Source: Octopus sinensis
Lineage: Eukaryota
NCBI RefSeq assembly: GCF_006345805.1
Contig: NC_043009.1
Span: 47,368,001 to 47,432,000 of the forward strand
DNA: 64,000 nt
Direction of reading: 5' to 3'
Every line of letters begins with the position of its first letter. Within the stretch, counting starts at the first letter, position 1. Shown here one piece after another: positions 33,054-58,255 of the stretch. The translations under genes were made by a program, and so were the position numbers. The notes beneath the pieces were generated by a model. That model saw nothing but the letters and a program-made list of their open reading frames with translations, ran no database searches and was not told the origin of the DNA.

Positions 33054-33106
<53 letters not shown>

Positions 33107-33121
33107 GTATACAATAATATA

Positions 33122-35942: not shown

Positions 35943-35946
35943 AATT

Positions 35947-35992
<46 letters not shown>

Positions 35993-36618
35993 ATATTCTT
36001 TTATTTGTTTCAGTCATTTGATTGTGGCCATGCTGGAGCACTGCCTTTAGTTAGAGTTTAATATCAATATCTAAGTTTTATATATACATATATGCTCTTA
36101 CATCTCTACCATAGTTCCCCTGAGCCACTTTTACATCTCTCACCACCACTTGTTATGGTCACCTCCACACCATCTCTCCTTACACTCTTATGAAACTTCA
36201 CCCTTTATCCTCATGCCTACCAACCCTTTCTAATCCTCTCTACCATTTCACTTATATCCACCCTGCTGCTGTACCTTGAGGGTATGCTTCGACACCATTT
36301 TCCTCTCTTTCTTTTTCAACTTAGGTAGCCGTGTCTCTCCTCAACAGCAAGATCCCTACCTCTAACCTTCTATTATATTTTTTAATTGCTCATCAACTGG
36401 TACAAAGGCACTTTCCTCAATACTGCACCCTCTCCCACTCAAGGGTCCTTGTCTTTCAAGTTACTTGGTGACCCCACTGGTGCTGGTGCTATGTAAAAAG
36501 TACCCAGTACACTCTGTAAAATGGTTGGTGTGAGGTAAAGCATCCAGTCATAAAAACCATGTCAAAGCAAGCAACAGAACTTGGCAAAGTCTTCTTGCTT
36601 GCCAGCTCCTCTCAAACC

Positions 36619-36841
36619 TATTTCTTTACTACCCACAAGGGGCTAAACACAGAGAGGACAAACAAGGACAGACAAACGGATTAAGTCGATTATATCGACC
36701 CCAGTGCATAACTGGTACTTAATTTATCGACCCCGAAAGGATGAAAGGCAAAGTCGACCTCGGCGGAATTTGAACTCAGAACATAACTGCAGACGAAATA
36801 CGGCTACGCATTTCGCCCAGCGTGCTAACGATTTTGCCAGT
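36619..36841 (-). mobile_element. SINE family B nested in an RTE tail
   Basis: 12-bp TSD tcctctcaaacc. Confidence 0.9.
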
Positions 36842-37074
36842 TCCTCTCAAACCATCCAACCCATGCCAGTATGGAAAACAGACATTAAATGATGATGATC
36901 ATGATGCTGTATGTGTGACTCTATGTCTGTATGTGTATGCATGTATGTATGTATTAAACAATAAAACATGTTAGTTAAGCATCCATTACTGCACAGTTTC
37001 ATTGGTTTGGATTTTTCAAATGGTGCACATCGAGCTGTTTATAAATCACAATATTTAAAAATGGCAGTATCTTG

Positions 37075-37480
37075 TGTCATCATCATCATCATCATCATCA
37101 TCATCGTTTAGCGTCTGCTTTCCATACTAGCATGGATTGGACGGTTCAACTGAGGTCTGGGAAGCCAGAAGGCTGCACCAGGCCCAGTCTGATCTGGCAA
37201 TGTTTTTACGGCTGGATGCTCTTCCTAACGCCAACCACTCTGTGAGTGTAGTGGGTGCTTTTTACGTGCCATACGAGGCTGACAAACGGCCACGATCGGA
37301 TGGTGCTTTTTACGTGCCACCGGCACGGGGGCCAGGCGAGGCTGGCAACAGCCATGATCGGATGAGGCCAGTCGGGGCAGCGCTGGCAACGGCCATGTTC
37401 GGATGGTTCTCTTACGTACCACTGGCACTTGTATCACAGCTGCAATTTCCATTGATGTTGATCGATTTCAATTTTTATTT
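37075..37480 (-). mobile_element. RTE 3'UTR fragment (related subfamily)
   Basis: (cat)n tail plus tail consensus and subrepeats. Confidence 0.8.
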
Positions 37481-37879
37481 TTTGTCATACACACAAGAAC
37501 CTACAAGGGAAGTAACTTATGAATAATTCTAAATGGTAGCTTCACTTGTATATGGTTTTGCAGATGTATTAATGGACTGCGTTTGAAGGATGATTGAGAG
37601 GCTTGAAACTTTCTTACAATGAATTTTGTACAGCCTATCTGAATACAGATACTGACATCCTTTGATCTGTCATTCATAAATGCTACAAATCCACTGGAGT
37701 ACGCTCACCTCATTTCTTTCCAGCTTTTCTCGGCATTCGGTGTCTATTCTACTCTTACTAAGCAATATTTCACTTCATACAAACACACTATATGACTTGC
37801 CCTCAGAAAGAGAGAGAGGGAGAGGGGGAGAGAGAGAGAAAGAGAGAGAGAGAGAGAAAGAGGGAGACCTGTTGTTGGC

Positions 37880-38110
37880 AACAGAATTTTTTTCCGTTTT
37901 CCCACTCCATCCTTACTCTTGTTGCTATGCTTTTGGAATACCCATTTCCACTATTCGTTAGATAACTGAGGTACCAGGAGCTATGATCAACTTCTAGCAA
38001 GCCTTCTGGGTAACTCAAAGAACCCATTTCTTTTGCATTCTTACTACTAAGTACTCCTGTGCATCTTATGCATACCAAAGCCTTCTTTTCTCTCAATCTG
38101 ATTGTTATTC
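37880..38110 (-). pseudogene. Old decayed RTE RT relic
   Basis: RCNRITIRLREKKALVCIRC...LLEVDHSSWYLSY...SIATRVRMEW aligns to the young RTE ORF. Confidence 0.7.
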
Positions 38111-38370
38111 TATTGCACCTTTTGTGCAACTACAGCTTATATTCAATGCTCTGTACAGAATTCTTATCTCATACGCTTCTGCATAATGAGCATGGCAACT
38201 TACCAATTGGCAATGTGGTTCCGTATTTATTCTTGCTTACTAAAACTTTTTGTCTTTGCTACATTTACTTCAAGTTTTATCCCACCCCCACATCATCATC
38301 ATCATCATATATTTGTGATTGTCTGTGTATAATTAATTCAGGATTGACTGAATTATCGTTGGCATCAGAG

Positions 38371-38414
<44 letters not shown>

Positions 38415-38964
38415 GGTAAACAGATAGATAGTCAAAGTAAGAGAGAAAAAGATAGGGTCTTTGGAAGAAAGCGGGAAAGAAAGATCAAACAACTTTTTTC
38501 CAGCACAAAAGAATTATATATATATATATATATATAAATAAATATGTATATATTCCGTGTGTACACATGTATATGTACACTGAGGAAGACTGTGGTGTTG
38601 ACATGTATACAGTTTGAATGTATATACACAGTGTGTGTGTATATTCAAAATGTATATGCTTTGATACCAGACTTTCTCCCTGCTCATATGTGTGTGTGCG
38701 CATTGCAAATAATATTGATATATATTTTTTTTAATGTAAATAAATTACTTTGTGATATTCATTCACTACAACATTAATTTCCAGAATCTTTATTTTCTCA
38801 GCCACACCATTTACATATGTATATCATGCATACATATACATACATTTTTATGTGACATGACATGTATTGGTGGGCCTGTGTTCTGTATGCATTGCGATAA
38901 AATAATAAAATAAAACTAAAAAAAAAAAGTATGTGAATACACACAACTCATACATATATATATA

Positions 38965-39322
38965 TATATCTTTTCTTTTTACTCTTTTTCTTGTTTCAGT
39001 CATTTGACTGCAGCCATGCTGGAGCACCACCTTTTAGTACTTATTCTATCGGTCTCTTTTTGCTGAACCGCTAAGTGACGGGGACGCAAACACACCAGCA
39101 TTGGTTGTCAAGCAATGCTAGGGGGACAAACACAGACACACAAACATATACATATATACGACAGGCTTCTTTCAGTTTCCGTCTACCAAATCCACTCACA
39201 AGGCATTGGTCGGCCCGGGGCTATAGCAGAAGACACTTGCCCAAGATGCCACGCAGTGGGACTGAACCCGCAACCGTGTGGTTGGTTAGCAAGCTACTTA
39301 CCACACAGCCACTCCTGCGCCT
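38965..39322 (-). mobile_element. SINE family A copy
   Basis: Revcomp match with internal deletion. Confidence 0.88.
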
Positions 39323-39526
39323 ATATATATACATGTTTATATATGATCATATAAGCATATCCTAGGTCTTCAAAAAACTCTCAGCAGATCTGAGTCTGCT
39401 TCAATGTCTGACTGACAATATTCATAACATCTATATAGGAACATAGATTTTTCTTCACTGTCCCAAAGTGTTCTTAGAAAACAAATTAAACTGATTAGGG
39501 GTTGGTGCCATCATCACCCCACCACC

Positions 39527-39945
39527 TTGGTCTCAAGAATTTGTCTTATGAAGAAAGGCTGAAGATGCTCAACCTTTATTCTCTAGAAAAATGACGACGC
39601 CGTGGTGATCTCATTCTTGCTCACAACATCATAAGCGGAAAGTGTAACCTCTCGAAAGAGCTGTTCTTCACTCCTGCTCCAGAGCGTCAGCTGCGGGGTC
39701 ACTCCGAAAAGCTCTATCTGCGACGATTTCATCTCAATCGAAGGAGAGGGGCTTTCTCCGTCCGGGTTGCAGATCCGTGGAATAAGCTGCCGGACGAGAT
39801 GGTGAAGATGCCGACAACCGCTCGGTTCAAAGTCTCCCTTGACCACAAGTGGCCTGACCTCTTTACATGAACACCACCCTGTACATAACTCCATGTCCCC
39901 CAACATGGCCTTGCTTTTTGAGCCAAACATTAACTAACTAACTAA
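39527..39945 (+). mobile_element. CR1-clade LINE 3' fragment with (CTAA)n tail
   Basis: Translates to LSYEERLKMLNLYSLEK*RRRGDLI...LRGHSEKL...FSVRVADPWNKLP (CR1 ORF2 C-terminus); ends taactaactaacta. Confidence 0.85.
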
Positions 39946-41331
39946 CCACCACCACCAGCACCTTTCTCGTTCATGCTGGCATGGTTCGGATGGTTTGGCT
40001 TGAATTGAGGAGACAAAATGGGCTGCATCGGGCTCCAATCTACTCTGGCATGATCACTACAGCTGGATGCTTTTTCCTAACACCAACCACTTCACAGAGT
40101 GTACTGGGTGTGTTTTTCACAGCACCAGTGTTGGTGAGGTCATCAAGTACCCACAAGACAATATCAGTAGCAAGGCCCAACAGCAAAGGCTGGTTTTACC
40201 CCCACCACTGCATCATGCTGGTTCTGTATCCTTTTGAGCAACATCAAATTCACTCATCCATCCACAAACACTCTCCAAGCTTTCCTATCATTTGTGGTAT
40301 CAAATTAAGTGAATTTAAAATCACACCTTATAATTTATAACATTAAATCACTTTATAACTGAAACATTCGAAAACAACAAGACTGTTTCAGTTATAAAAT
40401 GATTTAATGTTATAAATTATAAGGTGTGATTTTAAATTTACATAATTTGATATCATAGAATCTCATTCATTTCTATATAAATAAGCCTCTTCTTTTGAAT
40501 ACCAGTCATGATGTCATATGTATTTAGTCACAGAGTGTATTTAGGTTCCACAAGGACTTTTCAGTAGACTGGGATGAAGTGAAATGAGACTGGTTTCATT
40601 GTTACTTAAACACTTATTAGAATTCATTTACTTCTCTGATGCTGAGTAAAGACTACCAGTTAAAATGCAAGCAAAAGTATACATAGGCAAAGCTTGTACC
40701 ACGATTGGTATAACAGTCGAAGTTGGACGGTATGGCAATAGCAAATGATGTACCAATACAGCAGAGCTTATATAAATAGATATGCAGAATAATATTGACC
40801 CGTGTTTAGTTTACTTGTGAAACTAGAGCCTTGTAATGATTGAACTGACAGATCTGTTATTTAACAACTCATCAGGCTTGCTTACTACTTCTTCCAGGTA
40901 GGAACCATCATGAAAATGTTTTGTGTCTGGCACAATCTTGTTTATATTTTTCATGAATTATTTTCTGGAAATTACTACCCAGCATATTAGAAATAGGTAA
41001 ACCCTGAAGAGTTGTTAAATAATAAAATGATAAATTTGGTCCTCATCCTAATCTGCTAAAAATGCTCGCATGGGGCATAATTTCACTGAGACTAAACAGA
41101 TATTGTAAGACGTCTGTATATTTATGCATTCACTTATGTGTGTGGGTGTATGTTTATGTGTATGTGTGTGGCTGTGTGGTTAAAAGTTTGCTTCCCATTC
41201 TTGTGGTTTTGGGTTCAGTACCACTGTATGGTACGTTCGGAAAGTGTCTTCTGTTATGGGTCTAGGTTGACCTAAGCCTTGTGAGTGGATTTGATAAACA
41301 GAAACTGAAAGTATTTCACTACACACACACT

Positions 41332-41386
<55 letters not shown>

Positions 41387-43790
41387 TATATAAACACACA
41401 TATATACGTCTTTTGTTTATATGGATGAGTGTGAATATGTGTCTCTTTGTCTTGACATAGTACAATAATTGTAAGCAAGTATCACTGCCATATAAGCAGT
41501 GTTCTTCATCCCTAATCTTCTGTGTAAGCATATATAGCCTTTCTTGCATATATAATGCCTTTCTTGCAAGCAGTTAATGGTAGGTGACAGGAAAGGTACC
41601 CAGCTATAGAAAATCTGCCTCAACAAATTCTAACCCATGCAGTTATGGAAAAGTGAATGTTAAAATGAGGATTACGATTATATATATGTATAAGCTGTAT
41701 CTATATAAGAACCCACATTTATATAGTTACATATACAAAACTATATATTGGCACAAAAATTTATGTAAATGTGTGTGTTTAGAAATTCAAATAATTTGTA
41801 AATAAAAGTGAAAGAGAGTACTCAACATACTCAACATATGTGGTGGAAGATATTGTTTAACTTAACTGTTTTTTTTTCTTTTTTTTAGGGATTCAAGTTT
41901 CATGCATTTGCAATCTTCAGGCTTGCATTACATTTGTGAAACCTTTATATACCTCAGTCCATTAACTTGATTAATTAACAACAATGATGGTATAATGTGT
42001 TAACACAGTTTATTTCAGTTAACACTGAAACCACTCACAAATTGATGAGTGTTTTGTTAGCTTTTAGTACTTAATTCAGATGTTATCATAAGTATTATTG
42101 CTTTGGGAAGGAATGACATTGCCATGCTGAGTTCCTTTAATTGCACTGACCTAACATGAAATCTTCATATAGGATTCCAATCAACTTAGGGTTTATAGGA
42201 CATATCATATTAACACATTCCTTATAGACTTGCACCACATGTGTATAGGAAATTTTGCATGTCATTCAAGATATCTACACATGCACACGCAAGCGTGCAC
42301 ACACACATATATAATTGGCAGTGGTCGATTTTAGCATCTAAGGAACAGGCTTTCTGCAAATCCAATATTTAATTCTTCTGTGTTTCCATCTATGTCATGC
42401 CTTTCTGATTAAAAAAAAAGGCTAAATATGATAATGGTCTTAGTGATGATAATTACTGTAATGATGATAATGACAAAGATGATGTAATGGTAATTACACC
42501 TCTTTTGAAAGGTTAACAGCTTACATTAACATCGATCACCTCAGATCAACCCCTTACCCAGTGCTTTGTTAGCCTAAAGGTAGAGAATATAATTATCTTG
42601 CATCTGACCAAGCCGTAAAATGTATTACATGGAATTCCATAATTAATAGAATTAATAGACTGGTGGAAGGAGTAAAGTAAACGAGTGGAATGTAACCATA
42701 AGCAAGCATACACACACACACACACACACGCATGTACACGTACACACATTTCCATCTCCATTTATCAATAATCTTTATGAAGTGAAATATAATAGAGACA
42801 GCAGAATATGAGAAGAAAGGAGAGGAAAACCAGCACAAAGTATTGTTTGAGGTGATGAAGAAGATGTGCAGCTTCAAGCATATGCATTTAGATTTCTAGT
42901 TACCATTCTTTTGATAAGGGAATTCAGAGAAGATAGGTTTCACATTTGGTTGTAGCGAACTGTTGCATACCTCATGTATTGAGGTCTCCTGTGAAGGGTC
43001 ATGACAGAAGTCACTGACAAGCAAGATAAGGGGGATATCAGCTGTCAAGACAGAGTACATAGGGAGTAGAGTGTCAGATGACTAAACATGTCCAAAATCA
43101 TTGCAGCATTATCAAAGACAGACTCAAACCCAATACAAGCCTGCATTCAATTTTTAACTAATTTAAATTTTGGAGTAGTCACCCCTACATATCTTGACCA
43201 GAACTAAACATTAAGCTGATGATATCTTTTACTGCACTTTGGCTGCCTTTTTAATTATTTTATACGTAAAAGGCACTTGTGTTGGTGACACATAAAAGGC
43301 ACCCACTACACTTTTGGAGTGGTTGGTGTTAGGAAGGGCATCCAGCTGTAGAAATCAAGTCAAACCAGACTGAACCCTGGTACAGCTCTCTATCTTGTCA
43401 GTTCCAGTCAAGCTGTCTAACCCATGCCAGCATGGAAAACAGGCACTAAACGACAATGTTATGATTATTATTATTTTTCACTTTCATGTATAAGAATGTA
43501 TGAACATTCAAGGGAACATGAAACAATTTTTGGGGGTACAGACCAGTGATGTCAAACAGCAATGTTTAGCCAAGCCCCCAGTTCAATTTTATAGAAAAAA
43601 TAAATTTTAACTTAAAATATTCTCTAAAATATACATATCATGAGCATGTATTAAAATTTGGAAAACAAGAACATACAATGTTTAGTTCAGTCCCCTTACT
43701 CAAATTTTCAAAAAGACTTTTTAAATAATTTTTATATATATAATTATTACATAATTTAAAAATATTCTACACAATATATATTATATATAT

Positions 43791-44200
43791 AGGCGCAGGA
43801 GTGGCTGTGTGGTAAGTAGCTTGCTAACCAGCCACATGGTTCCGGGTTCAGTCCCATTGCGTGGCATCTTGGGCAAGTGTCTTCTGCTATAGCCCCGGGC
43901 CGACCAATGCCTTGTGAGTGGATTTGGTAGACGGAAACTGAAAGAAGCCTGTCGTATATATGTATATATATATATGTATGTGTGTGTGTTTGTGTGTCTG
44001 TGTTTGTCCCCCTAGCATTGCTTGACAACCGATTCTGGTGTGTTACATCACCGTCACTTAGCGGTTCGGCAAAAGAGACCGATAGAATAATTACTGGGCT
44101 TACAAAGAATAAGTCCCGGAGTCTATTTGCTCGACTAAAGGCGGTGCTCCAGCATGGCCGCAGTCAAATGACTGAAACAAGTAAAAGAGTAAAAGAGTAT
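43791..44200 (+). mobile_element. SINE family A copy
   Basis: Same modules as 56663-57065. Confidence 0.9.
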
Positions 44201-45206
44201 ATATACACATACATACATTGCTAACAGGCTTCAGATCTGGAACCTGTTTAAAGCTGTTATCAACAGCAATTTTGATTAGTCATATTAATGCACCACAGGG
44301 AATCTTTTGACTATTACTTAATAAAACTATGTATATACCATGTGAATGAGTAGAAATAGCATAAGCTTTGAGGAGCAGGGGACACTGTGTTTCAAATCAA
44401 ATGTGACCCCTGCTCTTCAAAGCTAGCTGACTTCATGCAATTTTGATTCAAATACTCCTGATCTCTCATTACACCTAGTGCGTCCCTGTTTCCAGATCCC
44501 ACTCTCGCCACTATGTTCAGTACAACTTCAACAGAACACTGAGCTTCAAGAACCCCCTTCTCTGTTCAGGAACATTAGCCACATTGATCACACTAGTCTA
44601 GGAGGGTCTTGCAAAGAAGACCTTTGACACAACCCTACTCATATCCAAACTATTAAATATATAAATAATGAAATAAAAATTGGAACAAAACAAAGCAAAA
44701 GCAATTTGTTGCTGGAAGTAGTGGACAATGTAGTAAGATGGACATATGTTATCCATGTTTAGCATGGGAGAGTAGATATTCAAATTGTATTGAGGATGTC
44801 AAGGTGGGGTTGGGTGGGTAGGATGTCAGGATATGTTGGGAGAAATGTTAATATAGGCACAGACATGGTTTTAGGGTTAAGAAGCTCGCTTTGCAACCAT
44901 GTGGCTGGGTGTGATCTCACTGTGAAGCACCTTGGGCAAGTTCCTTCTACTATAGCCTTGGGCTGACCAATGCCTTGGAAGTGAATTTGGTAAACAAAAG
45001 CTGTACGAAAGCCTATCATTTGTATATTTGTAAATATATGTATGTATGAATTGACAAGAATATGTTCTAGAATTGCAGCCTGCCCATGAACTGACAAAAC
45101 ACATACTTTGTGTATGTGTTTGATATTATTTTTATATATATATATACATATGTGTGGTGTGTTGTGTGTGTGTGTACATACATATACATATATGAATATG
45201 CATGTA

Positions 45207-45247
<41 letters not shown>

Positions 45248-45559
45248 CTATACACATATACATACATATATATTTATACATATCTATACACATATACATA
45301 CATATATATATATTTACACACACATATGTTTGCATGTTAGTGTGCTTGTATTTGCCAACAGTTGTTGGTTTGTTTACGTCACAGTAAGTTAGCAGTTTGG
45401 CAAAAGAGACCAGTAGAGTAAGTACCAGACTTTAAAACAAAACCGTACTGGTGTTGATATTTGTTTGACTAAACCTCTTCAATGCAATGCCCCAGCATGG
45501 TCACAGTTAAACGACTGTAAAACACATAAAATATAAATAATCCTTTCTCCTGGAAGCAC

Positions 45560-45940
45560 AAGGCCTCAAATTTGGGGAAGGGATTAAGTCGATTACATTG
45601 ACCCCAGTGCGTAACTGGTACTTATTTAATCGACCCCAAAAGGATGAAAGGCAAAGTCGACCTCGGCGGAATTTGAATTCAGAACGTAGCAGCAGATGAA
45701 ATACCTATTTCTTTACTATCCATAAGGGGCTAAACACAGAGAGGACAAACAAGGACAGACAAATGAATTAAGTCGATTATATCGACCCCAGTGCATAACT
45801 GGTACTTATTTAATCGACCCCAAAAGGATGAAAGGCAAAGATAACCTCAGTGGAATTTGAACTCAGAATGTAATGATGGGCGAAATATCGCTAAGCATTT
45901 CACCCAGCGTGTTAATAATTCTGCCAGCTCACCGCCTTAA
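45560..45940 (-). mobile_element. SINE family B dimer/nested pair immediately downstream of exon E4b
   Basis: Two tandem copies of the central domain. Confidence 0.85.
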
Positions 45941-46035
45941 ATAAAAGATAAATAATAAAAGGATATTTGGAAGACATAGAGAGAGAGAGGGTGGGTAGGG
46001 AGAGGTGAAACAAACAAAAGTGACTGCAAGCCAAC

Positions 46036-46113
46036 CTGCATGTGAAAAATCATAAGCTCATTGGCTAACTGGTTGCGACGCTGAGAAACATCCAGCTTCT
46101 GGTACATGACGCA
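46036..46113 (-). CDS. PDE2A: PDE2-like exon E4b (tandem paralogue of E4a, candidate mutually exclusive exon): CVMYQKLDVSQRRNQLANELMIFHMQ
   Basis: Acceptor (t)9cttgttacag, donor gttggc; 78 nt, phase 0-0, no stop. 14/26 identical to E4a. Confidence 0.85.
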
Positions 46114-46218
46114 CTGTAACAAGAAAAAAAAATGAAAAACAACAATATTGTAAGGGTGAGTGCAGGACATGCAAGCAAGAGCTAGTACAACAATGGGACG
46201 GGTTGTTTCCTGGGTTAC

Positions 46219-46296
46219 CTTCATGTGATACATCATCAGTTCGTTTATCAAATTGTTCCTGGCTTGCGAATCTATCACTTTGTTGTACATAAGAGA
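46219..46296 (-). CDS. PDE2A: PDE2-like exon E4a (GAF-B/catalytic linker helix, alternative copy a): SLMYNKVIDSQARNNLINELMMYHMK
   Basis: Acceptor ttttccag, donor gtaacc; 78 nt, phase 0-0. About 16/26 identical to recalled human [26 protein letters not shown]. Confidence 0.93.
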
Positions 46297-46756
46297 CTGG
46301 AAAAGATGACAATTTCGCAGTTAAGACCAGCTGAACGCATGTCATCTATTTTCACATCAAACATCTCCAACTAATGCAGTTTGGCTGTATCTGTCAATTT
46401 TTCACTGGGTTACTATTACAACAATTAACACATGAGAAACATAACAATTTAATAAACTATATAAGTAAACGAGAAAAAAATTCTATGTGACTTTAGCAAT
46501 TATTCGGACTGATTCGGTAAAGATCGATCTCTCTCTACCTTCATTTAAATTATTGAGATTAGACGATACATGGATATGGTAGACAAAAACAAACAAAAAA
46601 GTCAATTGGAATTAATCAATTGTAACAAATAAATAATTAGTAACGAACAGTACAAATAGATCAATAAATAACTGTTTGCGGGTTTGGATAAAATAGTAAA
46701 AACAACTGCATGTATCTGTACATATACATATATATACAAACATATATGTCTGTGTT

Positions 46757-46798
<42 letters not shown>

Positions 46799-46945
46799 AT
46801 ATATAATAAAATATTACTCATTATCTTTTATTAAATTTTTAATACTTTTGATATATATTTAAAATAATATAAATTAATTAATTTTATGTATTGGCTTAAG
46901 TTTTCATTGTTTGATTTGCCTAATAGTGGTTTTATCTCTAATTTA

Positions 46946-46993
<48 letters not shown>

Positions 46994-47642
46994 TGTGTGT
47001 TTTCACACACACATACACTTGGTGTTTATAATCTTCTTACAACATGGCCATATGTTATAACTCTCAATTCTTCAAATAAGACTCTTAAAACTCTTCTATG
47101 AAGAGATGAGAGGTATTAATATGTGCCAGGATTTTATCCAGCATTGAAAAATGTAGTGATGATCCAGCTGGCATGAGACAGAAAAGATCTGGAGAGGATT
47201 GAGTGATTAGTAATAATAACATGAAATATACAATATATATAATATATATATATATGTTGCATTTTGGGAGGGCCATATTGGCAATAAGAACACACACATT
47301 GGTTGCATTTCACTTCAGTTTTATTATGAGTTAATTAAACATTTAGTTATTCGATTAAATTAATTATTGATTAATTACTGATTAGTTTGTTAAACTTTAA
47401 TCACAGCCTTTCCCCCTTTTACACACTCCATGTTCTTTACTATGTGAGTAATGGTTAATTCTGAATTTTATTCAGTCAATTTTATTTACATAGTGTGTGT
47501 CTGTTGTTTAATTTTTAACTGGAGTGGTGGTGCTGCTACTCTGTGTGTGTGTTGTTGCATGTGATCATGAATGTCTATGTGTGGGGTGTTGTGAGTTGAA
47601 ATTTTGGGACTTTTGAGATCAGACAATGTTGCTTACACAAAC

Positions 47643-47675
<33 letters not shown>

Positions 47676-48207
47676 CATGTGTGTATGAGCATATGCATGT
47701 GTGAATTTATATGTTGTTTTTTTCTTTTGTTTTGCTTGAGACTTATAATTTGTTTTTTCCTTGTCCATTCAATATGTTCAATGCAACAACCCCCCCACAC
47801 ACACATACATCCATGCACAACCAGCACTACCAACACCACCTTGATCCCAATTTAAAAAAAAATATCATACACACATATCCACACACATAATATGAATATA
47901 CAAAGCAGAAGAAAATAAAAAATAGACTATTTGTCACACACTAAAAATTGCAAAGAACAAAGAATATGTGATATCAGGGAGAAAATGTAAGAGGAGCACT
48001 AATGCATGAAGTATGTAATCCATTGACAATAAAACTGAAGTGATCTACAACCAGTGTGTGAGGCTGTATTAGCCGTATGACCCTCACAAAATATAAAAAT
48101 ATTGGTTTCAAACATATAATTTCATATCTAGAAATTTTGCAAAACAAATACAAAAATGAAACAAGAAAAATTATAAATATAAATACATACATACATACAT
48201 ATATATA

Positions 48208-48238
<31 letters not shown>

Positions 48239-48326
48239 ATAACAGTAACAATAATAATGAGAATACACACACACATAAATTTAGACACATACATACACAT
48301 CAACAGATGCACATATATATATACAC

Positions 48327-48384
<58 letters not shown>

Positions 48385-48497
48385 GTGTGTGTGTGTGTGT
48401 GGTGTGTGTGTGTGTGTGTGTGTGTGTGTGACCGCATGTGTACCATTGGCGATTTTTTTTCTCTGTCTTCCCTTCTCTGGATCTTTCCTTCTCCGAT

Positions 48498-48532
48498 GTT
48501 TCCGACGAAGAGCTCTGCTCGAAACGTTAAAC
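48498..48532 (+). ncRNA. Minimal type I hammerhead-like motif with CCGA core variant, inside a short repeat (~48430-48610)
   Basis: GUUU-CCGACGA-AGAG(cucug)CUC-GAA-ACGU-U-AAAC. The same repeat family occurs without this motif at ~101-190(-). Confidence 0.6.
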
Positions 48533-49459
48533 TTTCCTGAGTGTCCAATAATACTATATTTGTTCCATGTCCTCACGTTGTGTTTTTTGTGCTTTCATGT
48601 TTGGATTAATTTTATATATATATATATATATTCATGTAGGCATGATTGATTGGTTAAATAGTTTGTTTCGCGATCATGTAGTCTCAAGTTTGTCTGTTGA
48701 TTACTTGGAATCCTTGAAACAAACTTCTTAATCATTGAGCAATGTGTAGGTGAATATGTATACATGTGTATGTGTTTATACCTGTGTATATATATATGTG
48801 TGTGTATATATGTGCACATATATATGATGAACTTACCATCAGAGTAACTGTATATCTGTATACATAAAATTGTTAACAGGGATCATTAATTAGTTTTAAA
48901 TATTTTTCATTTTTACCCAATTTCTAGCAAAGAGCTTTTAAAATATAAAACGTATCTAGAACATAGACAGTTTCAACACAACTTACTGAAGTGATTAAAA
49001 AAAAAAAAGAAACCCAAAAACATTATGTATGCTAAGGTATTGATTCTCAGCCTCAATAACCACTTAGAAAAATCACATCTGATTTCATTGGTATATACGT
49101 AGTAAACCTTGTAATTACCTATTTCTTTACTATCCACAAGGGGCTAAACACAGAGGGGACGAACAAAGACAAACGGATTAAGTCGACTATATCGACCCCA
49201 GTCCGTAACTGGTACTTATTTAATCAACCCCGAAAGGATGAAAGGCAAAGTCGACCTCGGCGAAATTTGAACTCAGAACGTAAAGACAGACGAAATACCG
49301 CTAAGCATTTCGCCCGACAATTACCCTTAATTGCATAAAATAATATAAAAACTGTAAGAAGTGAGATATAACACTACAACTACTAATGATAATAACAACA
49401 ACAACAGTAACAAGAACAACAAAAATAATAATAATGATAATGAATACCTACTGATGAAG

Positions 49460-49960
49460 TCTAAAGAATGGACCTTCATCAACATAGCTATTCCTGCAGA
49501 GCAGTATATTGTGAAGATAGAGAAAAAGTAAGTTAGGAAGTACCAAGATCTAGAACTGGAATTGAAAGGAATCCATAGAGTCTCAAAAGTGAGTGTGGTG
49601 GTGCCTATTGTGACCGGTGCACTTGGGGTGCCATCTCAAAGAGAGCAAATATTTTGGCATCAAAAGCTACAAATACCAAACATCAAACTTCATAGGAAGT
49701 ATTCAACTGGCAGTAATACTTGGAACAGTTTTGCCTTTCTAAACCGCAGAATGGAGCTAAGACATGACATAGATAAATCAGAAGAAGTTAAGTGAATAAA
49801 TAATGATGGTGATGATAATGATGATGATGATCACTCCTGTTTTGACATGATTGTCTGAAAGATTCTGCTAGTTGGCTGCCTTGATAATGAAAATAATAAT
49901 AGAGCTTCGACAGAAAATTTGCCTCTTTGGGATAGGAAAGATTATCAGGAAGGTTCTAAG
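49460..49960 (+). pseudogene. Decayed R4/Dong-type LINE relic (RLE endonuclease and C-terminus)
   Basis: FINIAIPAE..KYQDLELEL...VVPIVTGALG and QKICLFGIGKIIRKVLS motifs. Confidence 0.65.
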
Positions 49961-50131
49961 CAAGAATATTTGCAGTAGCCCTTCTTTTACTGAATGTTAG
50001 GAAAATTCCCTTTCGTAATATGAAAGGGAATTGACAGAAATGTTTAGATGGTGATCGTGGTAGTGGTGATAGTAGTTAGGACAGTGGTGATGATGATGGA
50101 GATGATGATGATGATGGTGATGATGATGGAG

Positions 50132-50164
<33 letters not shown>

Positions 50165-50572
50165 ATATTCTTTTACTCTTTTTATCTGTTTCAGTCATTT
50201 GACTGTGGCCATGCTGGAGCACAGCCTTTAGTTGAGCAAATCGACCCCAGGACTTATTCTTTGTAAGCCTAGTACTTATTCTATCGGTCTCTTTTACCGA
50301 ACTGCTAAGTTACGGGGACATAAACACACCAACGTCGGTTGTCAAGTAATGTTGGAAAGGACAAACAGACACACAAACATATACACACACATACATATAC
50401 ATATATATGATGGGCTTCTTTCAGGCTCCGTCTACCAAATCCACTCATAAGGCTTTGGTCAGCCCGAAGCTATAGTAGAAGACACTTGCCCAAGTTGCCC
50501 CGCAGTGCGACTGAACCCAGGACCATGTGGTTGGTAAGCAAGCTACTTACCACACAGCCACTCCTGCACCTA
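50165..50572 (-). mobile_element. SINE family A copy
   Basis: Revcomp match. Further diverged copies at ~44870-45530(+) and ~59685-60015(-). Confidence 0.88.
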
Positions 50573-50980
50573 TATGATTATGATGAACATGAAGAAGCTG
50601 ATGAGGATGGTGATATCGTTGACGATGATGATGATGATGATGTTAATGATGACCAACATAATGTGATTTGAAGATGTTCATTTCAACAAAGTGTTTTCCA
50701 ACCATTTTTTTTTTGCATATGAACCCTATTGATTCCTATTTCACTCTACAGGACCCTAATTGACATTCAATATCTAAAAAATCCTATTATATTTTAGAAT
50801 TAAATATTATTAAGAATTGTATGAAAAAAATTGTAAAAATATTTTGTGTATAGTAGCAGTATAACTAATTTATTGTGCAAGCTGGTGTTCATTCTTATCA
50901 GAGTGATGATGTTACATAATTGTTTTAGTGCACCAGAAGGAACATTTAAGATTAGATTGCATCACCAGGCATACTCTAGA

Positions 50981-51203
50981 ATTATTTCTTTATTGCCCAC
51001 AAGGGGCTAAACAGAGAGGGGACAAACAAGGACAGACAAAGGGATTAAGTCGACCCCAGTGCGTAACTGGTACTTAATTTATCGACCCCGAAAAGAGGAA
51101 AGGCAAAGTCGAACTCGGCAGAATTTGAACTCAGAACGTGACAGCAGATGAAATACCTCTAAGCATTTTGATCTGCACGCTAACGATTCTGCCAGCTCGT
51201 CTG
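50981..51203 (-). mobile_element. SINE family B
   Basis: 13-bp TSD ggcatactctaga (50968-50980 / 51204-51216). Confidence 0.9.
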
Positions 51204-51945
51204 GGCATACTCTAGACTTAGTCCTCAACCATTCTTTACTTATGGACCATTTTTGATTCCCATTTAATTTGGATGGACTCTCATAGCCATTCGATGTTTA
51301 AAAGAATTCTGTTATATTTTTATAACTAAATATTATTAGAAATTGTATAAAAAAAAATTTTTTTAATATTTTATGTTCTGTAGAAACATAACCAATTTAT
51401 TGCACATGAATTTTAACAACAAACTCATATATAGATCTCCAAGGGTCATATGAACCCTGGTTTACAACCACTGTTTTAACAGATCTAGTACCATTATTTT
51501 AACTCTGTTTTCCATATTTCTGTTGAAACATACAGCATTTATTTGAAAATAAAATGAAAAATTTAGTAAATTAACTCAGTCGTTATTAGTAAGCTGGCCT
51601 TGAGATTTTAAAATCAACATTGAAATTTTGGTTACAGGTCTAATTTAGGAAGTTTATCTCAAAGAATCAGGAGAAATCTCAGGCATGTTGATATGAAAAA
51701 TATTAAGAGTAATTTGCTCACTGCCAAAGCATTACTTGTAAGGAATCATGTACACATGATGGGCTTCCACACAGCCTCCATCAACCAAATTCACTCACAA
51801 GGCATTAGTTGGCCTGGAGCCATATAGCAGATGGTGTTGCACAGTGGAACTGAACCTGAAACCATATGGTTGTGAAGTGAGCTTCTTAACCTCAGAGCCA
51901 TGCCTGTGTCAATATACATACATACACACACACACATATATATAC

Positions 51946-51981
<36 letters not shown>

Positions 51982-52098
51982 GCACACACATATATCTATA
52001 TATATATATACATGTGTATACATATATATATACATATGTATACATACAGATATATTTATATGTATACATGTATATATGTGTATATATGTATGTATATG

Positions 52099-52144
<46 letters not shown>

Positions 52145-52145
52145 C

Positions 52146-52176
<31 letters not shown>

Positions 52177-52959
52177 GATATATATATATATATACACACA
52201 TATATACACACCCACGTGTAAATTTGACAGAGCATTTTAAGTCTGCATATCATTGCTACATGGAGTTAATGAAAGATGTGTGTTGTTAGAATTCAATGGT
52301 TTAAGTGAGGAGAGATATAGTCACTTTTCACTTATGTGCAGAAAGAAATAAAAAGAATGAAAGCTAAAAGCTTTTCCATAAAAAAAAAATGTTGTTGCTT
52401 TTTTGTAGAACATTTAAAAAAAAATGAAAATGAGAAACATGTAGAACAAATGTATATAAATGTATATAAATGTAGTGAAACTACTATGAGTGTAAATTTA
52501 TAAGTGGCTTGAATTCAAACAATATTTCCTAATACTTTTTATGTTTGGAATATCGAAAAACTTTTACGTTGTAAAAGAAAAAAGAAACAAAAAAAAACCC
52601 AGCAAAAACAAACTTTTTTTTTTTTATATTTTTAAACAAGGTAATGAGAAATATTCTATTTCTAAACTACGTTTTATGAAATCTGACTGTGCACGAAAAT
52701 AAACATTTGCTGAGATGTAACTGAAAAACTGCAAAGAAAAAAAAATAAATAAAATAAAATAAAATAAAAATATGTACCTGTATTAGCTTTATAGATTTTT
52801 CATTTATTTTTAGAGACTTAAAAATTTTTTTTATTTTTTTATTATAGGTTGAGTTCAGTGAATTTCAAGGTGGTGCATATTTCAGTGTAATTTATCAAGT
52901 AACAGCGAGCTTAGTGATTCAACTAGGATATATTTACTAAGAATATTTATAGTGTATTC

Positions 52960-52994
<35 letters not shown>

Positions 52995-53762
52995 TACACG
53001 TTTTTTTAATTAGGCATAATCAGTCTAGCAAGTGGTAGACTTATTAATCTAATTCAAGAACGGGGGGTCGATGATCAGATGCATGCCCAAGAAATCATCA
53101 GAATAGATAATCAGTGTATGGTTTTAGCTGTATGTTATCCACAAGAAAGGGATGAGTGAATAAAAGATTGCTCCCTTGATAAGTTTAGTGACTGTCTTTG
53201 AACAGCCAATGGCCTCAAACCTAGCATTTCCTCAATGGAGGACATTTATAAGATCTCTCACTGTTCAAGTTGGTGCAGGTTTTGAGTGAGATGTCTAGGA
53301 CTGCATGTGGATGGCATCTATGCACAGAATTTTAGGAAGAAATGAAGGATGGTATGATATGTATACTTAAATAGAAGACATTGTAGGCGTAGGAGTGGCT
53401 GTGTAGTAAGTAGCTTGCTTACGAACCACATGATTCCGGTTTCAGTCCCACTGCATGGCACCTTGGGCAAGTGTCTTTTACTATAGCTTCAGGCTGACCA
53501 AAGCCTTGTAAATGGATTTGGTAGATGAAAACTGAAAGAAGCCTGTTGTGTGTATATATATATATGTATAATAATAAATATTAGGGAATAAATCCAAACT
53601 TACAGGGAAAAGTCAGATTTAGGATTGAATCCAATTTATAGTAAAATATTATATTATATTAAATTAGAGACAAAACCACTATTATGCAAATCAAACAAAG
53701 AAAGACTTAATCCAATACATAAATTAATTCATATTATTTTGAAATTTAACAATTATTAATAT

Positions 53763-53826
53763 CCACTACGATCGTTTCATGTCTTCATTTCATCACATCT
53801 TTGAGTAGTAGACATTCTTCAGGTGG
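53763..53826 (-). ncRNA. Type I hammerhead ribozyme motif on the PDE2 sense strand
   Basis: CCAC-CUGAAGA-AUGUCU(25-nt loop)AGACAU-GAA-ACGAUCGU-A-GUGG: complete core, helix I 4 bp, helix II 6 bp, palindromic helix III, GUA cleavage triplet. Confidence 0.8.
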
Positions 53827-53876
53827 TTTCAAATCAGACTCAATATTCAAGTCTGAATATTGAGTCTGATTTGAAA

Positions 53877-53938
53877 CACCTGAAGAATGTCTACTACTCA
53901 AAGATGTGATGAAATGAAGACATGAAACGATCGTAGTG
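53877..53938 (+). ncRNA. Type I hammerhead ribozyme motif (mirror copy)
   Basis: CAC-CUGAAGA-AUGUCU..AGACAU-GAA-ACGAUCGU-A-GUG; helix I 3 bp. Confidence 0.75.
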
Positions 53939-54052
53939 GATATTAATAATTGTTAAATTTCAAAATAATATGAATTAATTTATGTATTGGATTAAGTCTT
54001 TCTTTGTTTGATTTGCATAATAGTGGTTTTGTCTCTAATTTAATATAATATA

Positions 54053-54089
<37 letters not shown>

Positions 54090-54989
54090 GTATATGTATA
54101 TATACATATACATATATATATATATATATGTATGTATGTATGTGTGTGTATGTGTTTGTGTATCTGTGTTTCTACCCCCTCCCAACATTGCTTGACAACC
54201 GATGGTGGTGTGTTTACATCGCCGTAACTTAGTGGTTCGGCAAAAGAGACCGATAGAATAAGTACTAGGCTTACAAAGAATAAGTCTTGGGGTCGATTTG
54301 ATGAACTAATGGCTACAGACAAATGATTGAAACAAGTAAAAGAGTATCTGTTTGTATACCCATGCCAGCATGGGAGGCGGGCATGAAACAACGATGATGA
54401 TGATGATGATAATGATCAAATCTTGTAGCTCCAGGTTTCTAGAACTGCTAGCTTGTACACCCTAAGTGTTTAGCACTTTGTTTAACCTCATGATAGCAGT
54501 TGTTTATCAGGCAACTAAGCTGCACCAATGGTAATTGTTGTAGGACCAGAAGAATTAACTGAATGTTTAGGAATCTGATAGGAAGACATGGTGGAAATGT
54601 TGGTGTAACTGCCAAAAGAACAATTTTCATTCTATTATGGTGATGAAACCTCAGACTGAGTTGGAAATATTTACATGAAGAATCTAACAAACCTTTCAGA
54701 TTCCATGAAATTTGCAAGGCCGATATTTACTTCAGCTGGTACAAAACTGGGGCAGATAAGACCATGTTTATATATGCCATCTGATTTAAAGCAAGGTTGG
54801 ATCAGAGTTTGCAAGTGCTTGCAAATTGGAGGAAAAACTATTTAGTATTTTAAATGATAATTTGAATCTATTTTGAATAAGAGAAAAGGATGGATTTGGA
54901 GGTGATGAAGTGATTAAAATGGAAAAGAATTCGTTCCAAGTGTAAAACAAAATGAGGTGATGTTAGGTTCACAATGTGTTATGTTAGTG

Positions 54990-55330
54990 CATCAGTTATT
55001 GTCAACCAAATACATCAGTTGGGGGAAGAAGATGGGTCACAGTGTGACTGGTTGTGGCTGATCAGTCTGATGTGCACATGGAAATCTCTGCCACAGGTTG
55101 AGGACTGGTGGTCTGCTGGAACTGAAGACAACAAGTTGATTTTGAATTTGTACAGATCGTGTTTTCTTTGTGCTCCCTGCAATCCTGTTCTGTTTCTAGG
55201 AGATGGCACCTCTGTTGGTTCAGCTTTGCCAGGCAGGGTGGTTTTGAGCTTGCATCAAATGGTTCACAATGTACTTATCAATGAACTACTGGGGTCAAAT
55301 GAAATGGATGGGGAGCCAGAAATAATGATG
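54990..55330 (-). pseudogene. Decayed RTE-clade C-terminal zinc-knuckle relic
   Basis: STCGRDFHVHIRLISH resembles the CxxCxRxFxAxIGLISH C-terminus of RTE elements. Confidence 0.55.
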
Positions 55331-55669
55331 TAAATTCTCGTGATGACCATTCATATTACAAATAAAAGAATGGTCCTCATGAGCATTACAATGAGCTTGG
55401 ATATATCCCTAAATTAATTTTAATTATCTAAGTATAAATGAGGCATAATTTGAATGTAGGTTTTATATATAGGAACGTCAGGATTTTATCAGTGAGCTAC
55501 AGTGGGGTTTAGGTATATTAATGGTACAAACAGTAAATTATATTTGAGGACTGACTCACAAAGATATCATAAATATCATAGGCTATAGATATTCTACATG
55601 CAACACAATCCCTTCTGTTGGGAAATATGATGAAGAGAAATATGATAATGACGATGATTTTGGTGATGG

Positions 55670-55707
<38 letters not shown>

Positions 55708-56662
55708 GTGATGATGATAAGGGTGATGACACTAATGACGATGGTGATTATGATGATGTTATCATATTGGTGGAAGGTGTAAAAAAATCAGTATGAGTGC
55801 AATTTCAGAGGGGATGAAGAGCTGAGGGGGTGATTCAAACAAACACAATTATTTCCAGGGATCTTTCCCAGAACCCTACAAACCAAAATAATAATAGAAA
55901 AATTAGAAACACTGCACCAGACACCATACAAATTTAATAGGGGAATTGACTCAGAAAATGTGACAAAGAACCTTGAAAAAAAAGAAAATTAGTGAAGAAT
56001 ATTAATACTATGCTAGGTAAACAAAAGAAAAACAAATCTCATAGATAAGAAAATCACACTAAACATACATTTACAAATACCTGGGAATCAATGAACTAGA
56101 CAGGTACAAAACACAAAAGAAAGTGATAGACATCCCTGTTTTAGCTGTCTCAGTAAGTTATAGTTGTAGCATTACCAGTTGATGCAGTAAAAGGATACCT
56201 ACCATGAATGCAGGGATATAGGGACATTATGTAACTAGAATAATTATTATAAAATATCCAGTGTTGGCCTACAAAACCGAATAGTAAAGGACAATGGAAA
56301 ATCAATGAAAATAGCTACAGAACACTAGCAAAATGATGGGAAAATAAATTCTTCTCTGCTGCCAAAGAAACCAAAAGTATATGAGAGGCTGAAATGACAG
56401 ACAATAGTGATGGGGAAAAAAGAGCTAAAATGTAAAAGAGATCGTAGGAAGTTAAAGCAAAGGCATGAAAAGCCCTAGAAAAAGAAACAGAAAAGGGTCG
56501 AAATAAACAAAACAATCATAACACTGGCACAGCTGTGACTGAAAGATTCTTGATTGTAGCATAAGATCAATGTCTTCCCATCAGAAAATAACAAAAGCAG
56601 GCAGGAAGCGAAATGTTTTAAGTCACAAAAGAATATGTGTAGGCTTGGAACAAACAATTAAA

Positions 56663-56827: not shown

Positions 56828-56858
<31 letters not shown>

Positions 56859-58213: not shown

Positions 58214-58255
<42 letters not shown>

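What the first reader, a model, noticed from the sequence alone, without database searches (positions are those of the whole stretch)
46036..46296. Duplicated, probably mutually exclusive exons rewrite the allosteric GAF-B-to-catalytic linker of PDE2
Seen: two 78-nt phase-0 exons with canonical GT-AG sites lie 105 nt apart. E4a encodes SLMYNKVIDSQARNNLINELMMYHMK and E4b encodes CVMYQKLDVSQRRNQLANELMIFHMQ (14/26 identical). Eight of the 11 identical non-Met residues use different synonymous codons, so the duplication is old and both copies appear to be under protein-level selection. The pair sits between the two largest introns of the gene (12.4 kb and 25.6 kb). Established: in mammalian PDE2A this segment is, as I recall, a single exon encoding the end of GAF-B and the helix that links GAF-B to the catalytic domain and relays cGMP activation across the dimer. 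Inference: the animal can make two PDE2 isoforms (and possibly heterodimers) with different cGMP-to-cAMP coupling. I know of no description of such a switch in PDE2 but cannot search the literature.
Basis: partly seen in the sequence, partly recalled or inferred. Interest (0 to 1): 0.9.

Follow-up and report, generated by a model that had tools for sequence, protein, structure and literature searches.

The report
Duplicated alternative linker exons in PDE2
A mollusc PDE2 (cGMP-stimulated phosphodiesterase) gene carries two old, well-conserved copies of the 78-base exon for the helix joining its cGMP sensor to its catalytic domain, so it can probably make two enzyme versions, though use of the second copy in mRNA has not yet been seen.

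Summary
On the minus strand, two 78-nt phase-0 exons (46296..46219 and 46113..46036) with AG/GT sites lie 105 nt apart. They share 14/26 residues, and 8 of the 11 identical non-Met residues use different codons.

The gene is a PDE2 orthologue. The exon aligns without gaps to human PDE2A residues 551-576, the LH2 helix between GAF-B and the catalytic domain.

New evidence: the same a/b pair sits in six other genomic lineages. At least two are gastropod-like. All have intact frames and splice sites, and six positions always distinguish copy a from copy b. Synonymous sites are saturated while protein change is low. Two more distant relatives have a single exon. A decayed third copy in one species shows what an unselected duplicate looks like.

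One spliced RNA contig and one annotated snail protein join E4a directly to E5, skipping an intact E4b. No E4b-containing transcript was found, and no mechanism enforcing exclusivity was detected.

Verdict: this is an ancient tandem exon duplication, most likely alternatively (mutually exclusively) spliced. It is a new member of a known kind, at a mechanistically interesting site. The functional consequence is inferred only.

The parts
63835..63916 (-). Upstream GAF-B exon (…[28 protein letters not shown]), context only
   Evidence: tblastn with the L002 transcript protein; splice sites read (acag|GA… …CG|gtaagt). Boundaries approximate.
61449..61483 (-). Small GAF-B exon (NILCFPIQDEK-G), context only
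   Evidence: tttcag|AAATATT… …AAAAAG|gtaatt
58708..58823 (-). E3: last GAF-B exon, …[38 protein letters not shown], strong donor CAT|gtgagt
   Evidence: aligns to human PDE2A 514-550
46297..58707 (-). Intron E3 to E4a, 12,411 nt
46219..46296 (-). E4a: 78-nt phase-0 exon, SLMYNKVIDSQARNNLINELMMYHMK. This is the a-type LH2 helix (S1, V7, hydrophobic 8, A/V/Y12, M22, K26) and the copy closer to human PDE2A.
   Evidence: Orthologues in L001, L003, L004/5, L006, L009/10, L011. Used in RNA contig L002 and in Candidula protein P0033.
46114..46218 (-). 105-nt spacer intron between the two copies. In frame and stop-free here only. Holds a UGCAUG at +47 and a long pyrimidine tract before E4b. Candidate branch points lie 62-86 nt from the E4a donor.
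   Evidence: branch-point distances read from the sequence
46036..46113 (-). E4b: 78-nt phase-0 exon, CVMYQKLDVSQRRNQLANELMIFHMQ. This is the b-type LH2 helix (C1, L7, D/Q8, H/R12, I/K22, Q26). Its donor is weak (CAG|gttggc).
   Evidence: Orthologues with the same diagnostic residues in six other lineages. No transcript seen.
20403..46035 (-). Intron E4b to E5, 25,633 nt
20283..20402 (-). E5: VSPEETSQLVCETDTLTDFSLDFDKFTFAPRWVPENDTCK, the start of the helix-loop-helix that leads into the catalytic domain
   Evidence: aligns to human PDE2A from residue 577
18755..18825 (-). E5b: AVAFMFEDLGFTTRWRIRKDSLV(R)
1614..17235 (-). Catalytic-domain exons (PDEase_I). Exon-level matches at about 17235-17110, 16664-16527, 14624-14556, 13541-13464, 11338-11240, 8593-8453, 1757-1614.
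   Evidence: tblastn; Pfam PF00233 at 3e-76 on the spliced composite

Best explanation
E4a and E4b are the two products of an ancient tandem duplication of the exon that encodes the LH2 helix of a mollusc PDE2. LH2 links the cGMP-binding GAF-B domain to the catalytic domain and crosses its partner helix at the dimer axis. Both copies are maintained as coding exons. Each mRNA most likely carries one of them (alternative, essentially mutually exclusive splicing), giving two PDE2 isoforms identical except for this 26-residue helix.

The residues that always distinguish a from b (positions 1, 7, 8, 12, 22, 26) lie on one face of the helix. They flank the invariant positions L16 and E19, whose counterparts in a related GAF-PDE dock the partner subunit's H-loop in the open state. 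The inferred effect is therefore a change in how GAF-B occupancy is transmitted to the catalytic site (basal activity, gain or cGMP sensitivity), and possibly in dimer pairing.

Shown: the duplication, its age, purifying selection on both copies, the mapping to LH2, and E4a-only splicing in two other species. Inferred: use of E4b in mRNA, exclusivity, and any functional difference.
For: Anatomy.

The same a/b pair, always 78 nt with AG/GT sites, occurs in L001, L003, L006, L004=L005, L009=L010 and L011, with spacers of 147-2940 nt.

Six positions are completely diagnostic between a and b across 7 lineages, and 8 positions are invariant.

Synonymous sites are saturated (pS 0.4-1.4) while pN is 0.12-0.25 between orthologues. 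In the close pair L003/L006, E4b has 4 synonymous and 0 non-synonymous changes, and E4a has 4 and 2.

Both exons are conserved islands in otherwise unalignable introns, at 82-85% in L003/L006 and 90-91% in L004/L011.

A third, unselected copy in L003 has decayed.

RNA contig L002 is 98.8-100% identical to genomic L009 and splices E3-E4a-E5, skipping an intact E4b 375 nt downstream. The Candidula unifasciata model P0033 also joins E4a to E5.

Both E4 donors are non-consensus in all lineages checked, while the E3 donor is strong.

Both isoforms align without gaps to PDE2A 551-576.

The diagnostic positions cluster on one helical face (resultant 0.72, P about 0.01).

The H-loop-docking residues V446/E449 of 10oz_A map to exon positions 16 and 19 (PMC13199883).

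LH2 helices cross at the dimer axis and form an interface (PMC6392808). The role of this helix in PDE2 activation is still described as unconfirmed (PMC13095499).
Against: No sequence joining E3-E4b or E4b-E5 was found in two protein-collection searches or two metagenome scans. Those collections hold almost no spliced mollusc PDE2, so the negative result is weak.

Both exons are multiples of three, so nonsense-mediated decay cannot enforce exclusivity.

Spacers of 105-2940 nt, with branch points at least ~62 nt from the donor, argue against steric exclusion.

No significant competing RNA pairing was found.

The functional inference rests on homology to vertebrate PDE2/5/6 structures, not on any measurement.
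Confidence: 0.65

Rival explanations
1. E4b is an extra cassette exon spliced in after E4a in some or all transcripts. This would give a PDE2 with a doubled 52-residue linker rather than a swapped one.
For: Both exons are 78 nt, so co-inclusion keeps the frame. The 105-nt spacer is long enough to be spliced out. No exclusivity mechanism was detected.
Against: L002 and P0033 go from E4a straight to E5. Every related GAF-PDE aligned has one 26-residue segment here. A 26-residue insertion would change both the length and the heptad register of a helix that positions the catalytic domains. The b copy keeps the same invariant residues (Y4, Q11, R13, L16, N18, E19, H24, M25) as a replacement would.
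Confidence: 0.1
2. Both isoforms are made one at a time, but the swap does not change allosteric coupling. Instead it changes something else carried by the exposed face of LH2, such as dimer partner choice (a/a versus b/b sorting), a binding partner, stability or redox sensitivity (Cys at position 1 of E4b).
For: The diagnostic residues lie on one surface stripe. C1 is unique to E4b in all 7 lineages and is absent from all single-copy relatives seen. LH2 is a dimer interface (PMC6392808).
Against: Nothing speaks directly against it. It is a variant of the best explanation at the level of consequence. The proximity to the H-loop docking positions favours an effect on the catalytic gate.
Confidence: 0.15
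3. E4b is conserved for an RNA-level reason, for example as a decoy exon or splicing-regulatory element that controls E4a inclusion or intron removal, and is not translated.
For: No E4b-containing transcript was found. The donors are weak.
Against: The pattern of change is that of a coding sequence. Differences fall at synonymous sites and the reading frame is open in 7 of 7 lineages. Length is exactly 78 nt. The residues kept are those critical in PDE2/5/6 LH2. An RNA element would not conserve amino acids through saturated synonymous change.
Confidence: 0.05
4. E4b is a dead duplicate (pseudo-exon) that merely looks intact in this genome.
For: In the window alone, nothing shows that it is used.
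Against: It is intact with canonical splice sites in seven lineages whose synonymous sites are saturated. The truly decayed copy in L003 shows how fast an unselected copy degrades.
Confidence: 0.03

Closest known systems
Tandem-exon-duplication-derived, mutually exclusively spliced exon pairs (e.g. SNAP25 5a/5b, GRIA flip/flop, tropomyosin; human catalogue in PMC8373072)
   Same: Two adjacent homologous exons of equal length and phase. The duplication is ancient and both copies are under purifying selection. The substitution is confined to one structural element near a functional site.
   Different: Exclusive use is not yet demonstrated here. The exon length is a multiple of 3, so frame cannot enforce it. 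PDE genes are not mentioned in the main text of that catalogue.
Mammalian PDE2A splice variants PDE2A1/2A2/2A3
   Same: Same enzyme family, and isoforms arise by alternative splicing of one gene (PMC13095499).
   Different: The mammalian variants differ only at the N-terminus and set subcellular location. This event swaps an internal helix between sensor and catalytic domain and leaves the termini untouched.
PRKG1 (cGMP-dependent protein kinase I) alpha/beta alternative duplicated exons
   Same: A cGMP-pathway enzyme in which old duplicated exons replace a helical, dimer-forming regulatory segment. It is listed as an ancient tandem-duplication event in PMC8373072. From my own knowledge, the two kinase forms differ in cGMP sensitivity.
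   Different: In PRKG1 the alternative exons are at the 5' end and chosen by promoter use. Here they are internal and must be chosen by the spliceosome.
Drosophila Dscam1 / 14-3-3zeta / mrp exon clusters with docking-selector RNA pairing
   Same: Invertebrate clusters of tandem homologous exons used one at a time.
   Different: Here there are only two copies, and no significant intron-intron complementarity was found in seven species.
LH2 linker helix of GAF-PDEs (PDE2A 3IBJ/9LRN, PDE6 6MZB, PDE6C/5 chimera 10OZ)
   Same: The exon aligns residue for residue with this helix. Y4, R13, hydrophobic 16, E19, Y23 and H24 are shared.
   Different: In the structurally studied vertebrate enzymes the helix is treated as a single sequence (not checked here whether any has an alternative exon). 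Here a genome encodes two alternatives.

Membership tests
PDE2 (cGMP-stimulated, GAF-containing class I phosphodiesterase) | Class I catalytic domain (PDEase_I, HD-type metal site) | tested here: met
   PF00233 at E = 3e-76, 256.7 bits, on the spliced composite of window exons, for both isoforms
PDE2 (cGMP-stimulated, GAF-containing class I phosphodiesterase) | Closest to PDE2A rather than to PDE5/6/10/11 | tested here: met
   3IBJ/9LRN (human PDE2A) at E = 7.6e-54 over all 168 residues, against PDE5 at 2.4e-24, PDE6 at 9e-19 and PDE10 at 1.8e-8. A JGI relative, P0026, is named cGMP-dependent 3',5'-cyclic phosphodiesterase.
PDE2 (cGMP-stimulated, GAF-containing class I phosphodiesterase) | Tandem GAF-A/GAF-B regulatory domains upstream | tested here: inconclusive
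   The window holds only the last three GAF-B exons. These align to PDE2A 514-550 and to the GAF-B part of transcript L002. Pfam GAF did not reach threshold on this fragment. Related fragments carry PF01590.
PDE2 (cGMP-stimulated, GAF-containing class I phosphodiesterase) | cGMP binding to GAF-B stimulates cAMP hydrolysis | not testable with these tools
   Needs enzymology
Mutually exclusive exons from tandem exon duplication | Adjacent homologous exons of the same length and phase with usable splice sites | tested here: met
   78 nt each, phase 0, AG/GT, 54% protein identity, in the window and in six other lineages
Mutually exclusive exons from tandem exon duplication | Both copies conserved as coding sequence across species | tested here: met
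   pN 0.12-0.25 with saturated pS. L003/L006: dN/dS of 0 (b) and 0.08 (a). Conserved islands in unalignable introns.
Mutually exclusive exons from tandem exon duplication | Transcripts contain exactly one of the two, and each is used somewhere | tested here: inconclusive
   E4a-only forms: RNA contig L002 and Candidula model P0033. E4b-only and a+b forms were not observed, and the searched collections hold almost no spliced mollusc PDE2.
Mutually exclusive exons from tandem exon duplication | A mechanism that prevents co-inclusion (frame/NMD, steric hindrance, U2/U12 incompatibility, competing RNA pairing) | tested here: not met
   Length is a multiple of 3. All sites are GT-AG. The spacer is 105-2940 nt, with branch points at least 62 nt from the donor. 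Duplex z-scores are between -2.3 and +1.2. Regulation by trans-acting factors remains possible.
LH2 linker (signalling) helix of GAF-PDEs | Segment between the last GAF-B helix and the first catalytic-domain helices, helical, at the dimer cross-over | tested here: met
   Ungapped alignment to PDE2A 551-576 and to 10oz_A 431-456. No Pro or Gly in either copy. The helix and cross-over are taken from PMC6392808 and PMC13199883, not modelled here.

The most novel reading that the evidence does not exclude
Molluscs have kept, since before the lineages sampled here diverged, a genetically encoded two-state allosteric linker in PDE2. Splicing would choose between two LH2 helices that set different basal activity or cGMP gain of cAMP hydrolysis. 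Mixed a/b dimers might add a third state. That would tune NO/cGMP-to-cAMP crosstalk by cell type. It would also be a natural linker-swap experiment on the still unconfirmed mechanism by which GAF-B occupancy opens the PDE2 catalytic site.
Probability: 0.3. Interest if true: 0.75.

Novelty: new member of a known kind. Interest (0 to 1): 0.5.

Why it matters
How cGMP binding at GAF-B is relayed through the linker helix to open the PDE2 catalytic pocket is still described as a hypothesis that "awaits confirmation" (PMC13095499).

Here evolution has kept two versions of exactly that helix. They have the same invariant core and differ on one face, next to the residues whose counterparts hold the partner's H-loop in a related enzyme. 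Comparing the two natural isoforms would be a clean test of the relay model. It would also show whether invertebrates tune cGMP/cAMP crosstalk by splicing rather than by gene duplication.

For splicing evolution, it adds an old, in-frame exon pair with no obvious exclusivity mechanism.

Tried and rejected
1. Looking for E4b in transcripts. Two searches of the 5.8-billion-protein collection, one with a single E3-E4b-E5 peptide and one with a 9-sequence a/b profile, returned mostly single-exon read-through ORFs from genomic contigs. The only spliced mollusc products were P0001/L002 and Candidula P0033, both a-type. Two degenerate-pattern scans of JGI metagenome contigs for spliced E3/E4 junctions found nothing for either isoform, so they say nothing either way.

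2. Competing RNA structures. Duplex folding was run between the upstream intron, the two ends of the spacer and the downstream intron in seven species, against shuffles. No consistent signal appeared; the best z-score was -2.3, in the window only.

3. Steric exclusion. Rejected because spacers reach 2.9 kb in other species.

4. Rbfox-type UGCAUG downstream of E4a. Present in 4 of 7 lineages. This is suggestive but not conserved even between the close pair L003/L006, so it is recorded only in passing.

5. Intron retention. The stop-free, in-frame spacer is seen only in the window and is probably chance.

6. Naming the species. Run and assembly accessions were not found in the literature. The protein collection lacks named cephalopod PDE2. 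Only the gastropod affinity of L004/L011 could be inferred, from Candidula P0033.

7. Two failed look-ups. The Pandit 2009 PDE2A structure paper could not be retrieved. One look-up of a window ORF failed on coordinates.

8. Structure prediction. Not run. A monomer model of a fragment would not address the dimer interface.

Full report
**What is in the window**

The feature lies on the minus strand. Read as reverse complement, 46296..46219 is preceded by ttttccAG and followed by GTaacc, and encodes SLMYNKVIDSQARNNLINELMMYHMK. The second exon, 46113..46036, is preceded by ttgttacAG and followed by GTtggc, and encodes CVMYQKLDVSQRRNQLANELMIFHMQ.

Both exons are 78 nt and phase 0. The spacer is 105 nt. 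The flanking introns are 12,411 and 25,633 nt. Within the 64-kb window each exon finds only the other (E = 6e-6).

**The gene**

A tblastn probe laid out the gene, and reading the splice sites refined it.
- Three GAF-B exons at about 63.9, 61.5 and 58.8 kb.
- The E4 pair.
- E5 at 20402..20283 and E5b at 18825..18755.
- Catalytic exons down to about 1.6 kb.

The spliced composite matches Pfam PDEase_I at 3e-76. Its best solved relatives are human PDE2A chains 3IBJ and 9LRN (E about 1e-53), far ahead of PDE5, PDE6 and PDE10. It is therefore a PDE2 orthologue.

Both isoform versions align without gaps to PDE2A. In 9LRN numbering the 26-residue exon equals residues 551-576 ([26 protein letters not shown]). 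It lies between the end of GAF-B and the VS(D/P)… start of the catalytic-domain constructs. E4a scores a little closer to human than E4b (185.5 versus 178.1 bits).

This segment is the LH2 linker helix. In GAF-PDE dimers the two LH2 helices cross at the symmetry axis and form part of the interface (PMC6392808; PMC13199883).

**Is the second copy real? Cross-species evidence**

The protein collection holds prokaryote-style ORF calls, so most hits were read-through translations of single exons from genomic contigs. I used those hits to fetch the surrounding DNA. This gave orthologous loci from several other animals.

Six further lineages carry the same tandem pair, always 78 nt with AG/GT at the same boundaries:

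| Locus | Spacer between E4a and E4b (nt) |
|---|---|
| L001 | 147 |
| L003 | 2604 |
| L006 | 2940 |
| L004 = L005 | 503 |
| L009 = L010 | 375 |
| L011 | 793 |

The a copies read S[LM]MY[KNQ][KN]V[ILM]..Q[AVY]RN.L[AI]NELMM[YF]HMK. The b copies read C[LV][MI]Y[QRK]KL[QD][DV][ST]Q[HR]R..L.NE[LI][ML][IK][FY]HMQ.

Six positions are completely diagnostic:

| Position | a copy | b copy |
|---|---|---|
| 1 | S | C |
| 7 | V | L |
| 8 | I/L/M | D/Q |
| 12 | A/V/Y | H/R |
| 22 | M | I/K |
| 26 | K | Q |

Eight positions are invariant in all fourteen sequences (Y4, Q11, R13, L16, N18, E19, H24, M25). The duplication therefore predates the split of all seven lineages.

The E4a of L004 and L011 is identical to that of an NCBI protein from the land snail Candidula unifasciata (P0033). 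Those two loci are therefore gastropod-like. The other taxa, and the window's own species, could not be named.

Two more distant relatives (L007, L008) have a single 78-nt exon with the same boundaries. Its sequence mixes a-like and b-like states.

**Selection**

- Between orthologues, synonymous sites are saturated (pS 0.4-1.4) while pN is 0.12-0.25 for both copies.
- In the closely related pair L003/L006 (dS about 0.38), E4b has four synonymous and no replacement changes. E4a has four and two.
- In both close pairs (L003/L006 and L004/L011) the introns do not align at all. E3, E4a and E4b stand out as 82-92% identical islands.
- L003 supplies an internal control. A third E4a-like copy at 12461-12547 has lost its acceptor, its frame and its end. 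That is what an unselected duplicate looks like.

E4b is therefore a maintained coding exon, not a relic.

**Is use mutually exclusive?**

This is the weak point. One Logan RNA contig (L002) is 98.8-100% identical to the exons of genomic L009. It splices E3-E4a-E5-E5b-E6 and skips an intact E4b that lies 375 nt beyond E4a. The Candidula model also runs from E4a into E5. Co-inclusion is therefore not constitutive.

I found no sequence with E4b spliced to E3 or E5. The collections contain essentially only these two spliced mollusc PDE2 products. A control scan for any spliced E3/E4 junction in JGI metagenomes was also empty. The absence is therefore uninformative.

No enforcing mechanism is visible.
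- Both exons are multiples of three, so nonsense-mediated decay cannot police co-inclusion.
- All sites are GT-AG.
- Spacers range from 105 nt to 2.9 kb. Even in the window the candidate branch points lie 62-86 nt from the E4a donor.
- Duplex folding of flanks and spacer in seven species gave no consistent signal.

One feature does fit regulated choice. Both E4 donors are non-consensus in every lineage where I read them (window, L001, L003, L004, L006, L009, L011). E4a donors lack +5G (gtaacc, gtacca, gtatta, gtattt, gtaact, gtaaag). E4b donors are gttggc, gttagt, gtgggt, gtcagt and gttggt. The neighbouring E3 donor is close to consensus wherever it was read (gtgagt, gtaagt, gtaagc, gtaaga).

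**How it most likely works**

The helix keeps its core in both versions and changes one stripe. On a 100-degree-per-residue wheel the six diagnostic positions give a mean resultant of 0.72 (P about 0.01 against random position sets). Five of them (1, 8, 12, 22, 26) fall within 80 degrees.

E4a puts hydrophobic residues at positions 8 and 12, where E4b puts Asp/Gln and His/Arg. E4b alone has Cys at position 1.

In the cryo-EM structure of a PDE6C/PDE5 chimera, the H-loop that gates the catalytic pocket of one subunit is held open by LH2 residues V446 and E449 of the partner (PMC13199883). Aligning that chain (10oz_A; Y434 = exon position 4) places V446 and E449 at exon positions 16 and 19. Both are invariant in molluscan a and b, and E19 sits on the same face as the diagnostic stripe (positions 12 and 26 are exactly two turns either side of it).

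My best reading is as follows. The two exons give PDE2 isoforms whose LH2 surface differs next to the H-loop docking point and/or at the LH2-LH2 crossing. This would shift the closed/open equilibrium and hence basal activity or cGMP gain. That step is inference from homology. Effects on dimer sorting, partners or redox sensitivity are equally open.

**Comparison and novelty**

Old tandem-duplicated exons used alternatively are a well-known class (PMC8373072), so the kind is not new.

I found no report of such an event in PDE2 or any PDE. The known mammalian PDE2A variants differ only at the N-terminus (PMC13095499). That review states that the proposed relay from GAF-B through the helix to the H-loop "awaits confirmation". 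That open question is why a natural pair of alternative helices is of interest.

I rate it a new member of a known kind, of moderate interest.

Noticed in passing
window 46114-46218 (minus strand); ORF 46320..45940: The 105-nt spacer between E4a and E4b is in frame and has no stop codon, so intron retention would also stay in frame (E4a + 35 aa + E4b). The spacers of L001 and L004 contain stops, so this is probably chance.
   Followed up: partly
window about 46167-46172 (minus strand), +47 of the spacer: A UGCAUG (Rbfox-type motif) lies downstream of E4a and upstream of E4b. (U)GCAUG also occurs within 150 nt downstream of E4a in L003, L004 and L011. It does not occur there in L001, L006 or L009.
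   Followed up: partly
L003 12461-12547 and L003 9855-9923: A decayed third E4a-like copy (SMMYNQNSMVSHVQNTLSKQLMICNIMFL*, no acceptor) lies upstream of the functional E4a. A partial duplicate of exon E3 lies just upstream of E3. This locus seems prone to local duplication, or the assembly has collapsed or expanded there.
   Followed up: partly
L003 13158-13264 versus L006 14881-14983: About 100 nt of intron directly downstream of E4a is conserved between the two close relatives, and about 64 nt upstream of E4b. Conservation around constitutive E3 stops within 5-15 nt of the exon. The gastropod pair L004/L011 does not show this.
   Followed up: partly
window, e.g. 61973-62290, 51082-51297, 49227-49373, 45510-45704, and many others on both strands: A short interspersed repeat recurs throughout the introns (translated as ...RGRLCLSSFRGR... 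or, on the other strand, ...KDERQSRPRRNLNSE...). It occurs together with very abundant TA/CA-type microsatellites.
   Followed up: no
window 60656-60928 (minus) and 35463-35759 (plus): Open frames that look to me like Tc1/mariner-type transposase fragments lie inside PDE2 introns (identified by eye only).
   Followed up: no
L007 16812-18622 (minus strand of the locus): In the single-exon outgroup, a DSCAM-like gene (FN3_DSCAM, I-set hits) lies tail to tail immediately downstream of PDE2.
   Followed up: no
L002 (Logan RNA contig SRR4181786) around 1326-1490 and after 1984: The reading frame of the transcript contig shifts twice relative to the PDE2 protein. One 1-nt gap against genomic L009 was seen. 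This is probably assembly error or partial intron retention, and it does not affect the E3-E4a-E5 junctions.
   Followed up: partly
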